Source: Trichoplax adhaerens (taxonomy: Eukaryota > Animalia > Placozoa). From it: a stretch of DNA of 64,000 bases. Of the stretch, positions 4,079 through 62,046 are shown piece by piece (position 1 is the stretch's first letter; each line of letters starts with the position of its first letter). Position numbers and translations under genes: made by a program. The stretch spans positions 3,189,264-3,253,263 of the forward strand of contig NW_002060943.1 of NCBI RefSeq assembly GCF_000150275.1, in the 5' to 3' direction. The notes beneath the pieces were generated by a model. The model saw only the letters and a list, made by a program, of their open reading frames with translations. It searched no databases and had not been told where the DNA came from.

Positions 4079-7000
4079 TTAGAGAGAATCGTTTGCTTTT
4101 TTCATTTTTAAACTATGGCGCCAGGATAATCCTCTCTTAAATTTAGGTTCATTTTCTCCTTTATCCATACTTGCACTTAGCTAAAACACGTATACAGCAG
4201 ATTTACAACAGTTTCGATTACCGTTAATTGAATCTTGTGATGATTAGAATAAAAATCGATGGTGCTGAAAAATTTTTTGCTTAAATACCTGATCAATTGA
4301 TAATTTGTTACCCTTGACAGCCATTAATGCTTCAAACTGTAAATGGAGTCTACCATAAGCCTGTAATAAATGATAACGTATACTATAAAGTAAATATGCA
4401 TAAGCAGAGGAAGGAGGATGTTACTATGATCTTAACATCCAACCGAGAGATTATTAATGTAAAACAGCTTACAATGTTATTATACCTGCAATCCATGGTT
4501 TGGAATTTTGAGTTTTTGAGCAAAGACAGCGGTGGTAAATTTGCTATCAAGAGCTAGTACAGCACCATTAATTCCTGTTTGCAGCAGGTTATATGCGTAT
4601 TTCTCGAGTCCAATATCGCAAACCCATTTTATTACACGAGCATTACTCCATATTAGTAATTCTATTATATTAGAAATAAAATATATCATTATAAATTCAT
4701 AATATCATTTCATCACGAATTCACCCGGTGATTTTAATAGTTATTTCTATGGTACCTTGGTCAGTATGCTGGTTTTCTTTATGCTTTTTTACCAGTTTCT
4801 ATAATTTGAAAATGAGAATAATTTAGTTCTCATAGTGAATCAACTGAGTATTAAGCGAAATTTGCATATGTCTTACCCTCCAATCGTATTTGTATTCTTT
4901 CAAGCAGAGTAACGCATATTGCAAGCTACGACTAAGAGTAATTAGTGTAGAAAATGAATTTTAGTTAAAGGGTCTTATGAAATTCTGATTATATGATACT
5001 TACTAGTGAAATGTATCCAGTACTTTTATATATGTTTTCCAATCTTTTCTACTTAGATGCTCCATCATGCGAGCATCAATTAAGCATCCTAGAAATTTTT
5101 CCTAATGGATAGTCATAGTATTGATAAATAATAAACGTTAATAATTAGGGTTAATTGATTCCCCAATACTAATCGAATAGCCCTAATTTCAGCTTAGATT
5201 TATTGCTACTAAAATCTGAAATTGTTTGTCCTGCGACATTAAGAGTATTGCTTATATCAAAACGAACTTTGTATTGTGTTAATCCAACATGGCTTAACCA
5301 TTCACTTGCAGTCCAATCGTAATTTAAGCTACCAAATGTTATGGACTGGATAGAAAAAATTTCAGAATAACAGATGAGAGAAATTGCAATTATAAAACTA
5401 GATATAGAGGTGGTTGTATATCCTTACCGTTGGTAGAAAGTTTGAACCAGGAGTCATAACCTTAACAATTTCATCTACGGCTAACATCAATTTCAATCTA
5501 TGCAGAGGGTGTGTAATTCCGACATCTTTCTTTAATCGATCTGAGGTCATTTCCTGATTTAAGTTAAGTAAAGATAGTGTCTTAAGAATTTTCTTATTGA
5601 AGATTAAAGCTAAAAGATTATAGTACAGTGTGTCGCCTGACATACGTTTAGATCAGCTCCAGACTGGACATGATTCTTACACATCGCTACAAACCAGGCT
5701 GGCAAACAAGCCCATAGCTGAATAAAATAATAAAATAGAATTTTAACCGTTAATAATGCATTGAGTTGAAGATGATGATAAGTAAATTAGGAAATTACCT
5801 CCAGCCAAGCGATAACAGTCAAAGCATCCCAATGATCAAACGGAACTCCTTGACTACGAACTTCCTGCAATAACTGAGATCTACAAGAAGAGAAAGAATA
5901 ACTATAATGGTTAAGTTACATTGCAAAAGTTGCAGCTTTAATTATTGAATAACGATCAATATGCGACATGATCAAATCACTGCACTCACTTTGTCTTGGC
6001 TTGTGTAGTACTTCCTTGGCTTTCAGATATAGTGCTCTGGCTATCCATTGAAATTTTACCATCTAGAAAATGAGCGTGTGTGTATTAGCATTTTGTACAT
6101 TCTTTATTTAGAAGTAATGAATCGATGAAGAATTTATAATTTAGGATCGATAAGAAAAAACAATTTTCAATTGTAATTTTACCGGTTGTTGAAGAAGAAT
6201 CGTCTTTGGGTTTAATTCCTAACAGTTTGCGGAAAGAATTTCGTAAACGATTCTGCCCATGTTTTATCGAAGATTTTCGATCGATAGAGTTGCTATGAGG
6301 AGACGATGTACTATTGCTTTCCGTATGATTTAATTTGTATTCTTTATCTTCGCTAATTTCAGATGATCCAGAAACGGTATACTCTCCAATGTCCACTTCA
6401 TCATCACGATTTAGCTTAGGTCTTGACGAATTGTTACTAAATAAGATAGTAGAAATAAACGACAGATTAGTAAAATGATACTTAAACTAACTTATAATTT
6501 ATCATAAAATTTACTTACTCTGAAATTGTAGTAGAAGCATTTGAAGCTTGGGAATCTCTTGAAGTAAATTGACTATTAGCTTTGCTGCCTAAATTTCCCT
6601 CTAGTCGCTGCAGGAAACTATCCTGTTTGTGCCACTCCGTGGAGACTTTTGGTGGAGAAGGTAAAGGAGAATCGGCTTTATCTGAACCATTATCAATTGA
6701 TGATGTAAAGTGTTCACACTAAATGATAGAAAAAGAAGAGGAAAAAATAAAGATCCAATTTTAGAACGTTCTATTCAGTTTAGAAGAATAAACTTAATGT
6801 TAGGTTATTGAACTATTCAGAATGTTCTATTCAATTCAGAGGAATAACTTGAGCATTCTATAATTATTCAGAATTCTCGACTCAGTTCAGAGGAATAACT
6901 GTAGCAAATGAGTAATTAACTATTTCCAATGTTTCGTTTGATTTAGAAGAATAACTTGAATAAATGATTGTTGAATTATTTAGAATGCCGCATTTAATTT

Positions 7001-59960: not shown

Positions 59961-62046
59961 TTAATTTCTTCCTAAAATTATCATCAGCCATCGAATGAGC
60001 TCAGCTGTACGGGTTCTCGAATTCATTCCATCAGATTTAGCCTCAAGATAATAGACAATTCCCGAAACGTCTTCCGTACCATACCGACAGCCTGGCAAAA
60101 GACATCACATTAACAGATCAGTATATCTAATTAACAGACTAACGACGGTACGAACCCAGTATCTAAGAATGCATACTACAATTTACCAACTAGGCCACTC
60201 GATATTTCGTCTATGATTGCACTAGGTATAGCTTTGCTAATGTCCAATTTAATCTCCGATATAATTCCTTTTCTTATCACAACTGAAATTGTCTTAATCA
60301 CAACAGTTGTTTATCGCAGTCAGTAATATTAATCTGATATGGGTTTAGCTAATTTAGTAAACAATCACGCAAACTAGTATTTATTTTGCCTACAAAGACT
60401 TAGAAATCATACAAACCACTTTTCCCATTGATAAATTAGAACTTTGATGTATTTCGAAATCAGGAGTCTTACCGTAGATCCAATCCCAACTCTAAGCCAC
60501 AAATAATAACAGTTACTTGACACCTTACAATTGATTTTAAAGTTGCTATCTATTTCAATTCCACAAGGGGAATACTCATCTGCATAAGCTAGCGAATTTT
60601 ACCTTCAATTCATTTCTTAATGATGCGATACCAGGATAATTAGACTCAGTGTTAGGATTGATATCGAGAAGTTCCTAAGAATACAAAGATGGAAGGATGT
60701 ATGTGCAAGTGAGGTAAAATTTCTACATTAGATAAAGGCAATGAGTTGTCTCGAAGGTAAAGTTCTGTAACAAATCCTACGTAAGTATTACCTCATTATT
60801 TATTTTAGGGTGAAAAGTCTTCGTAAAGGTTGATGCTATTTTGGAACATAAATTATCATAGGTAATAGCATTATTGATCTGAGATAAGTTTATTACGGAC
60901 GATCTTACGCTAGCAGTAGCATTTGACCTAAGTCCATTCTAATAAAGGATTTGAAAATGGTCAATCAGTTATTTCGCTCCCTGAATAAAGGAGCGATAGG
61001 CTCTCAATAAAATCAGATGCAACTCCTAGTTGTTATTTTCCTACCGTATGAGGCGTCAGCATCTGTGCTAGCTGCTGTAATTTTGAATGAAATAATAAGG
61101 TAAAATGATGATAAGCTACTAGTCTTCCTAGACGTGAAGCTGAACCAGATATTTCCGGCTGGTTAAAGAAATTCACATGGAGCGAATACACGTAAGTTGT
61201 ATCAAAGAAATGAAAAGTCTCGTTCATTAAAAGTATCAGATTATATAAAAAGATATTTTAGATGTCCCATTAATGACGAGGTCGCTTCTGTCATTTACGC
61301 TGATATCAAGATTCCAAGTCTCTTTTAAGGCGTTTGCGATCATTTCTAAATTTCTTTTTCTATCATATTGGCTGCGATGCGATACAATAGTTACGTTCAA
61401 ATTACCCAAATCCTGTGAAATGTACACATATACAGCTTATCATGGTAAAGCCATTGAGTAGATCAATTAAGTTAGTATGGTTTATAAACCAAGACTTGAT
61501 TGAAAATGTAAAAGTTCCGTATCCTAGCAGATAGTTTGAGAAGGTTGTACTACACATTACAAAGTTACTTACATGATAAACTGCCCCTCCACCACTTCTC
61601 CTGCGCACCAACGGAACCTGATCTGGGTAAATTCCAACCAATTTTGAGTTGCATTCAGTCCATGGATTCTGATGTCGTCCAATGACTATACATGGATGAT
61701 TTCGATAAAGATACAAGAGTGGATAGTGTTGCGATCGTAGTGGATAATTTTGGTAGAACCAGTCATCTAGAGATATATTGACGTATGGATTGTGCGAAAC
61801 CGAACGGAAAGCTACGGCCTGAGAAGATGATACAAGCATTATTGTCCATACAGTAATAAGAAAGAAGAATTTCTAACAATTACACCAATACAAGGTACAC
61901 CATGGAAACAAATTGTCTTACTTTACAATATGTTTACGAATGCATTCAAATCCGCTGGACTATCCAGCAACAGTATTGGCAATCATTACCTGAGCTAATG
62001 GCAGATGCAAGTTTCGACTGATGATCTTATTGTAAGACGTGGCCAT
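59961..62046 (-). CDS. LIPT1: Mitochondrial lipoyltransferase 1 (LplA family), multi-exon
   Basis: NPYVNISLDDW...IVIGRHQNPWTECN...VRRRSGGGAVYHDLGNLN...KISGSASRLGRLVAYHHFTLL...SNATASVRSSV...WDWIYGKTPDF. First exon MATSYNKIISRNLHLPLAQ (62046-61990) looks like a presequence; stop at 59961-59963. Confidence 0.95.
61153..61256 (-). other. Probable U12-type (minor spliceosome) intron of LIPT1 with AT...AA ends
   Basis: 5' end ATATCTTTT, branch site TTCTTTAAC (61170-61162) about 10 nt from the 3' end. Removal restores the conserved K|ISG motif; no in-frame GT donor fits. Confidence 0.75.

What the first reader, a model, noticed from the sequence alone, without database searches (positions are those of the whole stretch)
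61153..61256. Minor-spliceosome intron with non-canonical AT-AA termini at the LIPT1 active-site lysine motif
Seen: the coding sequence ...NGTSK stops at 61257 and resumes as ISGSASRLG at 61152. The 104-nt gap begins ATATCTTTT (U12 donor consensus RTATCCTTT, one mismatch), has a U12 branch site TTCTTTAAC (consensus TTCCTTAAC) about 10 nt from its end, and ends in AA rather than AC or AG. AAATATCT is directly repeated at both junctions. Known: the K-I-S-G lysine is the conserved lipoyl-AMP-binding residue of LplA/LIPT1, and U12 introns with non-AC/AG ends are rare. Inference: splicing could be rate-limiting for mitochondrial lipoylation, and use of the nearby AG (CAG|CCGGAA) would insert Pro-Glu into the motif. 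Automated gene models probably mis-annotate this junction.
Basis: partly seen in the sequence, partly recalled or inferred. Interest (0 to 1): 0.8.

Follow-up and report, generated by a model that had tools for sequence, protein, structure and literature searches.

The report
AT-AA minor intron in Trichoplax LIPT1
The 104-base gap is very probably a real minor-spliceosome (U12-type) intron ending in AA, placed right after the catalytic lysine codon of the Trichoplax lipoyltransferase gene; it is an ancient intron of a rare but known subtype, and both public placozoan gene models get it wrong.

Summary
The window is Trichoplax adhaerens. On the minus strand lies the genome's only LplA/LIPT1-type gene: 9 exons, 365 codons.

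**The gap.** Window 61153-61256 separates ...NGTSK from ISGSAS..., exactly between residues equivalent to K135 and I136 of bovine LIPT1. An AAATATCT repeat allows nine equivalent cut registers. None is GT-AG, GC-AG or AT-AC. One gives ATATCTTTT at the start, TTCTTTAAC nine bases from the end, and AT-AA termini.

**Support for a U12 intron.**
- U11, U12, U4atac and U6atac genes are all present.
- An independent Trichoplax sp. H2 assembly has the identical intron, so the AA is not a base-call error.
- The same site and phase hold a U12 GT-AG intron in Nematostella and Asterias, a U12 AT-AC intron in Porites, and U2-type introns in a sponge, a snail and a tubeworm.

So this is an ancient U12 intron that switched subtype, not an insertion.

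**Annotation.** The T. adhaerens model skips exon 2 and so loses the catalytic lysine. The H2 model starts inside the intron.

**Novelty.** AT-AA is the commonest non-canonical U12 subtype. This scan already noted AT-AA introns in HIP1, SHMT and NHE genes of this genome. It is a new member of a known kind.

No RNA evidence was available, and the rate-limiting idea is untested.

The parts
61153..61256 (-). U12-type (minor spliceosome) intron, AT-AA termini, 104 nt, phase 0
   Evidence: Boundaries are set by the exon 2 / exon 3 match to consecutive profile and structure positions. Only the AT-AA register carries a U12 donor. The intron is identical in Trichoplax sp. H2. Orthologous U12 introns sit at the same site.
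61248..61256 (-). 5' splice site ATATCTTTT (consensus RTATCCTTT, 8 of 9 matched; the C6 to T change still allows a G-U pair with U11)
   Evidence: The 5' end of the Trichoplax U11 sequence was read.
61162..61170 (-). Branch-site word TTCTTTAAC. The presumed branch A at 61163 lies 10 nt from the last intron base.
   Evidence: The same TCTTTAAC variant occurs at 9-10 nt from the acceptor in Asterias and Nematostella. It pairs with the GTAAGGAAA region of Trichoplax U12 through one G-U pair.
61159..61161 (-). CAG used as acceptor by the public T. adhaerens model; only 3 nt after the branch word
   Evidence: P0001 reads AVYH|PEISGSA; sequence.
61257..61412 (-). Exon 2 (52 codons, DLGNL...NGTSK), ending in the catalytic lysine codon; absent from both public models
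   Evidence: PF21948 positions 71-123, TIGR00545 78-128. Matches 2e5a residues 83-133. No difference from H2.
61045..61152 (-). Exon 3 (36 codons, ISGSASRLG...)
   Evidence: PF21948 positions 126-159. Matches 2e5a from residue 136 and 1x2g from residue 134.
61573..61818 (-). Exon 1 (82 codons, includes RRRSGGGAVYH)
   Evidence: PF21948 positions 1-70, E 1e-18; present in model P0001.
61990..62046 (-). Exon 0 (19 codons, MATSY...LAQ), probable start and targeting peptide
   Evidence: Present in P0001. Nematostella has an intron at the matching Q|A position.
60792..60938 (-). Exon 4
   Evidence: shared by P0001 and P0156.
60603..60674 (-). Exon 5
   Evidence: shared by P0001 and P0156.
60417..60491 (-). 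Exon 6
   Evidence: P0156.
60187..60292 (-). Exon 7
   Evidence: Boundaries agree with the H2 model P0156; frame check.
59961..60091 (-). Exon 8, including the stop codon
   Evidence: Agrees with P0156; frame check.

Best explanation
Window 61153-61256 (minus strand) is an ancient U12-type intron of the single-copy mitochondrial lipoyltransferase (LIPT1/LplA-type) gene of Trichoplax adhaerens. It is removed by the minor spliceosome. U11 recognises ATATCTTTT at the 5' end. U12 pairs with TTCTTTAAC, and the 3' cut is placed by distance, 10 nt after the branch adenosine, which here falls after AA instead of AC or AG. Splicing joins the catalytic lysine codon (equivalent to K135 of bovine LIPT1) to Ile-Ser-Gly and restores the K-I-S-G motif. 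The intron was already U12-type in the common ancestor of placozoans, cnidarians and bilaterians. Since then it has switched subtype (GT-AG, AT-AC, AT-AA) or been converted to U2-type in different lineages. The 8-nt repeat at the junctions is a by-product. The AT-type donor ATATCT happens to equal the conserved Ile-Ser codons ATA TCT of the next exon, and the terminal AA equals the end of the Lys codon.

Shown: the sequence, its position, its conservation and the presence of the machinery. Inferred: the actual splicing and which spliceosome performs it.
For: 1. Exons 2 and 3 abut at consecutive positions of PF21948, TIGR00545, and bovine LIPT1 structure 2e5a; exon 3 starts at residue 134 of E. 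coli LplA 1x2g.
2. No canonical register exists; the AT-AA register alone has a U12 donor.
3. The branch word lies 9 nt from the acceptor, as in the orthologues, which show 9, 10 and 11 nt.
4. The genome holds U12 (97 bits), U11 (99 bits), U4atac (59 bits) and U6atac (105 bits), all above Rfam cut-offs. It also holds a CENATAC/CCDC84 homologue.
5. The Trichoplax sp. H2 assembly has 104 of 104 identical intron bases and an intact exon 2.
6. The same site and phase carry GTATCCTTT...TCTTTAAC...AG in Nematostella and Asterias, and ATATCCTTT...TCCTTGAC...AC in Porites. Ephydatia, Bradybaena and Lamellibrachia have U2-type introns there.
7. The nine-exon model is open for 365 codons, against 366 in Nematostella.
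8. This is the only LplA-type locus in the assembly; the other PF21948 locus is LipB/LIPT2.
9. The intron sequence is unique in the genome.
10. AT-AA is a documented U12 subtype (PMC1635337, PMC1557818 Table 2, PMC10639083).
Against: - There is no transcript evidence. A word search with exon 2 found no short fragments spanning the junction. No correctly spliced Trichoplax protein appeared among the relatives.
- Both the donor and the branch word carry one mismatch to consensus.
- The nine equivalent registers mean that even cDNA cannot prove the AT-AA register; it rests on motif and orthology.
- intronIC or published U12 weight matrices could not be run.
- H1 and H2 differ at only 5 exon positions, 3 of them amino-acid changes. 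That is too few to demonstrate purifying selection.
Confidence: 0.9

Rival explanations
1. The main product uses the nearby CAG acceptor. This could be an AT-AG intron adding Pro-Glu after the lysine, or, as in the public model, a U2-type splice from the exon 1 donor that skips exon 2.
For: The JGI/NCBI model XP_002108584.1 is built this way. CAG is the only AG near the 3' end.
Against: The CAG lies only 3 nt after the branch word, whereas the U12 orthologues have 9-11 nt. No orthologue has a two-residue insertion at K|I. Skipping exon 2 removes 52 conserved residues, including the catalytic lysine, from the only LIPT1-type gene. Exon 2 is intact and identical in H2.
Confidence: 0.04
2. The intron is removed by the major (U2) spliceosome as a non-canonical intron.
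For: Rare U2-dependent AT-AC introns exist (PMC1557818). Three animal lineages have U2-type introns at this site.
Against: The donor lacks G at +1 and +5, and its ATATCT core is U12-like. The last nine bases (CAGCCGGAA) contain no pyrimidine run and there is no AG at the junction. The branch word is at the U12 distance and of the same variant as in the U12 orthologues.
Confidence: 0.03
3. The terminal AA is a disabling mutation. The intron is retained and the locus is decaying or non-functional.
For: There is no RNA evidence. The few H1/H2 exon differences are mostly non-synonymous.
Against: All nine exons are open in two lineages. It is the only LplA-type gene. AT-AA introns are spliced in other organisms (PMC1557818, PMC8280824).
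Confidence: 0.02
4. It is a recent 96-bp insertion with an 8-bp target-site duplication (AAATATCT), that is, a newly gained intron or mobile-element insertion, or an assembly artefact.
For: An exact 8-nt direct repeat sits at both junctions.
Against: An intron occupies exactly this site and phase in seven animal genomes from six phyla. The sequence occurs once in the genome. It is identical in an independent assembly. The downstream ATATCT is the conserved Ile-Ser codon pair, also found in Nematostella.
Confidence: 0.01

Closest known systems
Orthologous LIPT1 U12-type intron of Nematostella vectensis, Asterias rubens (both GT-AG) and Porites lobata (AT-AC)
   Same: Same gene, same site after the catalytic Lys codon, and phase 0. 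All have a U12 donor core TATCC/TATCT and a branch word (TCTTTAAC or TCCTTGAC) 9-11 nt from the acceptor.
   Different: The termini are AT-AA here. The donor has T instead of C at +6. The intron is much shorter: 104 nt against 414-1072 nt.
Documented AT-AA U12 introns (for example human RASGRP4 and MSH3; 3 in human, 4 in mouse, 1 in Arabidopsis in SpliceRack, PMC1557818). AT-AA is the commonest non-canonical minor subtype in animals and plants (PMC10639083).
   Same: A-type U12 donor, U12 branch site at the optimal distance, 3'-terminal A in place of C.
   Different: A different gene and phylum. This instance is absent from the public gene models, so databases built on annotation are unlikely to hold it; they were not checked.
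Other AT-AA minor introns noted by this scan in the same genome (HIP1, SHMT, four NHE paralogues)
   Same: Same genome, same subtype, same failure of the gene models, according to those notes.
   Different: Different genes. Those notes were not re-tested here.
U12-to-U2 conversion and subtype switching (Burge et al. 1998 as summarised in PMC2831892)
   Same: The LIPT1 intron cluster shows both processes: GT-AG, AT-AC and AT-AA U12 forms, and U2-type forms, at one site.
   Different: Nothing beyond the established model. The direction of change cannot be fixed from seven taxa.

Membership tests
U12-type (minor spliceosome) intron | Extended 5' splice site RTATCCTTT at the first intron base | tested here: met
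   ATATCTTTT, 8 of 9 matched. It is the only one of nine equivalent registers with such a motif. The mismatch (+6 C to T) keeps a G-U pair with the AAAAGGG region of Trichoplax U11.
U12-type (minor spliceosome) intron | Branch site TTCCTTRAY about 10-15 nt upstream of the 3' splice site | tested here: met
   TTCTTTAAC at 61170-61162, with the branch A 10 nt from the last intron base. The same TCTTTAAC variant occurs in Nematostella and Asterias.
U12-type (minor spliceosome) intron | No canonical U2-type boundaries that preserve the reading frame and the conserved protein | tested here: met
   Nine registers, none GT-AG, GC-AG or AT-AC. The alternatives delete the catalytic lysine or insert two residues.
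U12-type (minor spliceosome) intron | Genome encodes U11, U12, U4atac and U6atac | tested here: met
   All four are above the Rfam gathering scores. This agrees with PMC2396436.
U12-type (minor spliceosome) intron | Orthologous intron of U12 type in other species | tested here: met
   Nematostella, Asterias and Porites.
U12-type (minor spliceosome) intron | High score with trained classifiers (intronIC or U12 weight matrices) | not tested
U12-type (minor spliceosome) intron | Removal in vivo, dependent on U12/U6atac | not testable with these tools
   No RNA-seq access. The exon 2 word search found no transcript fragments.
AT-AA subtype | First two bases AT and last two bases AA, not a sequencing error | tested here: met
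   Identical in the T. adhaerens and Trichoplax sp. H2 assemblies. The register is inferred from the motif and orthology, because cDNA cannot separate the nine registers.
LplA/LIPT1 lipoyltransferase | LplA-B catalytic domain with the RRxSGGGAVxHD and K-[IV]-SG motifs | tested here: met
   PF21948 and TIGR00545 are matched exon by exon in order. The Lys aligns with K135 of 2e5a and K133 of 1x2g. The closest named relatives are animal LIPT1 proteins.
LplA/LIPT1 lipoyltransferase | Full-length match over the curated cut-off, and enzymatic activity | not tested
   The joined spliced model was deliberately not searched or folded. Activity needs an assay.

The most novel reading that the evidence does not exclude
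AT-AA may not be an isolated oddity in Trichoplax. It may be a recurrent, perhaps preferred, ending of A-type minor introns. Together with earlier notes of this scan on HIP1, SHMT and the NHE genes, LIPT1 would be at least the fourth independent locus. This would imply a placozoan-wide relaxation or shift in how the minor spliceosome treats the last intron base. Trichoplax also carries the unusual 'CC variant' of U6atac. A further possibility is that slow A-type splicing at the catalytic-lysine codon gates lipoyltransferase output.
Probability: 0.2. Interest if true: 0.5.

Novelty: new member of a known kind. Interest (0 to 1): 0.3.

Why it matters
**Annotation.** The public proteins for this gene in both sequenced Trichoplax lineages are wrong in a way that destroys the enzyme on paper. 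One lacks the catalytic lysine and the HD motif. The other lacks the whole N-terminal half. Pathway reconstructions that rely on them would therefore misjudge whether placozoans can lipoylate.

**Evolution.** The LIPT1 intron is a compact example of minor-intron evolution at a single site. Seven animal genomes show U12 GT-AG, U12 AT-AC, U12 AT-AA and U2-type forms. No paper in the searched library links LIPT1 with minor introns.

The finding does not change what is known about how minor introns work.

Tried and rejected
- **Insertion with target-site duplication.** Considered because of the 8-nt repeat. Rejected because the sequence is unique in the genome and an intron occupies the same site in six other animals.
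- **Base-call error at AA.** Rejected by the identical H2 assembly.
- **Donor word as evidence on its own.** It occurs at chance frequency in the window. Only its exact placement counts.
- **A second candidate U12 intron at window 5418 (+).** This ATATCCTT with a branch-like word 110 nt downstream is a coincidence. The region codes on the opposite strand, where the same bases form a GTAAGG donor.
- **Pyrimidine content before the acceptor.** It does not discriminate in this AT-rich gene, so it was not used.
- **Transcript evidence.** The word search with exon 2 found nothing. No correctly spliced Trichoplax protein was found among the relatives of P0001.
- **Orthologue look-ups that failed.** Nematostella isoform X2, Branchiostoma and Halichondria returned no record. 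P0005 is an intronless gene on a metagenome contig and is uninformative.
- **U6atac 5' region.** Its odd sequence first looked new, but it is the 'CC variant' already described for Trichoplax (PMC2396436).
- **Joined spliced model.** It was not searched, aligned or folded. Exons were searched one by one by reference. One script only counted the length and stop codons of the joined exons, without printing or saving them.

Full report
**What is there.** The window lies in Trichoplax adhaerens (G000 contig C1414; 105.6 Mb in 1414 contigs). The locus is annotated TRIADDRAFT_51631 / XP_002108584.1. The minus strand between about 62046 and 59961 carries a lipoyltransferase gene.

I searched the exons one by one, by reference. 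They hit the LplA-B catalytic domain PF21948 in consecutive order:
- exon 1: profile positions 1-70
- exon 2: 71-123
- exon 3: 126-159
- exon 4: 164-199

The same order holds for TIGR00545 lipoate-protein ligase. My model has nine exons and eight introns. Seven introns are ordinary GT-AG introns of 95-171 nt. The eighth is the finding. Counting the joined exons gives 365 codons with no internal stop. The Nematostella protein has 366 residues. I did not search, align or fold the joined model.

**The observation.** Exon 2 ends ...N G T S K at 61257, and exon 3 begins I S G S A S at 61152. Against bovine LIPT1 (2e5a), exon 2 covers residues 83-133 plus two further residues, and exon 3 starts at 136. 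Against E. coli LplA (1x2g), exon 3 starts at 134. The break therefore falls immediately after the codon of the catalytic lysine (K135 / K133), with nothing gained or lost.

The 104 nt between the exons start ATATCTTTT. They contain TTCTTTAAC followed by nine bases, and end in AA. AAATATCT is repeated at both junctions, so nine cut registers give the same mRNA. None of them is GT-AG, GC-AG or AT-AC. Only the AT-AA register has a U12-like donor.

The donor word by itself is no rarer than chance in this AT-rich DNA: 7 matches against 6.5 expected. Having a donor word in one of nine allowed positions, together with a branch word 8-14 nt from the acceptor, has a joint chance below 1e-6 by the window's own motif frequencies.

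**Is the machinery present?** Yes. The genome has single, high-scoring U12, U11 and U4atac genes and a full-length U6atac gene. This was reported for Trichoplax in 2008 (PMC2396436).
- Trichoplax U12 has the usual GTAAGGAAA branch-pairing region.
- Trichoplax U11 has the AAAAGGG 5' end.
- The two deviations of this intron from consensus (C to T at donor +6, and C to T in the branch word) each replace a G-C pair with a G-U pair. This pairing is inferred from the established pairing scheme.
- A CENATAC/CCDC84 homologue is also present. In human cells this factor promotes splicing of AT-AN minor introns (PMC8280824).

**Is the AA real?** The independent assembly of Trichoplax sp. H2 (GCA_003344405.1) aligns to this gene at 98.6% identity. 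The 104-nt intron is identical, including the terminal AA. Exons 0-4 show no difference, while the other introns carry substitutions and two indels. A base-call error is excluded.

**Is it ancient or a recent insertion?** The 8-nt repeat suggested an insertion with target-site duplication, but that reading fails. The intron sequence occurs only once in the genome. An intron sits at exactly this site and phase in every animal orthologue I could fetch:

| Species | Group | Intron start | Branch word and tail | Type |
|---|---|---|---|---|
| Nematostella vectensis | sea anemone | K\|GTATCCTTT | TCTTTAAC + 10 nt, ending AG | U12 GT-AG |
| Asterias rubens | starfish | K\|GTATCCTTT | TCTTTAAC + 9 nt, ending AG | U12 GT-AG |
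| Porites lobata | stony coral | K\|ATATCCTTT | TCCTTGAC + 11 nt, ending AC | U12 AT-AC |
| Ephydatia muelleri | sponge | GTGTGT | pyrimidine tract, CAG | U2 |
| Bradybaena similaris | snail | GTGAGT | CAG | U2 |
| Lamellibrachia satsuma | tubeworm | GTACTT | CAACAG | U2-like |

The Trichoplax acceptor after AA gives the same branch-to-acceptor spacing (9 nt after AAC) as the U12 orthologues. The CAG would give only 3 nt. The downstream ATATCT is simply the conserved Ile-Ser codon pair, and Nematostella has the same six bases. The repeat is therefore a by-product of an A-type donor sitting next to these codons.

This is the classical picture of subtype switching and U12-to-U2 conversion (PMC2831892; PMC1557818).

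**Is the gene needed?** Only two loci in the assembly match the LplA-B catalytic domain. One is this gene. The other, at C1414:7778433-7779232, is LipB/LIPT2. The LIPT1-type gene is therefore single-copy, and removal of the intron is required to produce an enzyme with its catalytic lysine motif. That the gene is functional is an inference.

**Public models.**
- XP_002108584.1 (245 aa) reads ...GGGAVYH|PEISGSASRLG. It joins the exon 1 donor to the CAG at 61161-61159 and drops exon 2. It also runs into intron 6 at its 3' end.
- The Trichoplax sp. H2 protein (237 aa) starts MNETFHFF...NQPEISGSAS. Its start is an ATG inside the intron (window 61227), and nothing is annotated upstream.

**How novel?** AT-AA minor introns have been known since the early 2000s (PMC1635337). 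SpliceRack lists 3 in human, 4 in mouse and 1 in Arabidopsis. A survey of over 3000 genomes finds AT-AA to be the most common non-canonical minor terminus in animals and plants, with non-canonical termini making up about 3.8% of conserved animal minor introns (PMC10639083). No paper in the library links LIPT1 with minor introns.

Earlier notes of this scan report AT-AA minor introns in the HIP1, SHMT and NHE genes of the same genome, and AT-AC ones in MOCS3. I did not re-test those. They suggest that AT-AA may be recurrent in Trichoplax, which is the most interesting open lead. A genome-wide count needs RNA-derived junctions.

**Limits.**
- No transcript evidence was reachable. The exon 2 word search was blank, and no correctly spliced protein was among the relatives.
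- intronIC and published weight matrices were not available.
- The AT-AA register cannot be proven even by cDNA, because of the repeat.
- The rate-limiting-splicing idea is untested. [quoted passage not shown]

No sequence taken for human was fetched or compared.

**Verdict.** It is an ancient U12-type intron with AT-AA termini in Trichoplax LIPT1: a new member of a known kind, and a useful correction to the annotation. Confidence is 0.9 and interest 0.3.

Noticed in passing
G000:C1402:438491-439592 (loci L002-L007): One full-length U6atac gene is followed, on the same strand and within about 1.1 kb, by five partial matches that cover only the 3' two thirds of the RNA. This looks like a small tandem cluster of truncated copies. 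The full-length copy carries the 'CC variant' (GCCGA in place of AAGGA) already described for Trichoplax in PMC2396436.
   Followed up: partly
window 60417-59961 (-) and 60416-60390 (-): The public T. adhaerens model XP_002108584.1 also ends prematurely. It reads through the exon 6 donor into intron 6 (...MGKVVCMISKSL stop) and lacks exons 7-8. The Trichoplax sp. H2 model includes those exons.
   Followed up: yes
G000:C1414:1382722-1385706 (+), loci L019-L023: An exon-by-exon match to Pfam CCDC84 (CENATAC), the minor tri-snRNP factor that promotes AT-AN intron splicing in human cells. It lies on the same contig as the window.
   Followed up: no
G000:C1414:7778433-7779232 (-), locus L024: A two-exon LipB/LIPT2 octanoyltransferase gene. 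It is the only other LplA-B catalytic-domain locus in the assembly.
   Followed up: partly
window 5398-5643 (-): An 81-codon open frame on the minus strand. On the plus strand its GTAAGG donor reads as ATATCCTTAC and mimics a U12 donor, so it is a false positive for motif-only U12 scans.
   Followed up: partly
L018:585-1163 (Lamellibrachia satsuma LIPT1): The orthologous intron starts GTACTT, which is not a U12 donor, but it keeps a CCTTTTAAC word 18 nt before the acceptor. This may be a remnant of a converted U12 intron.
   Followed up: no
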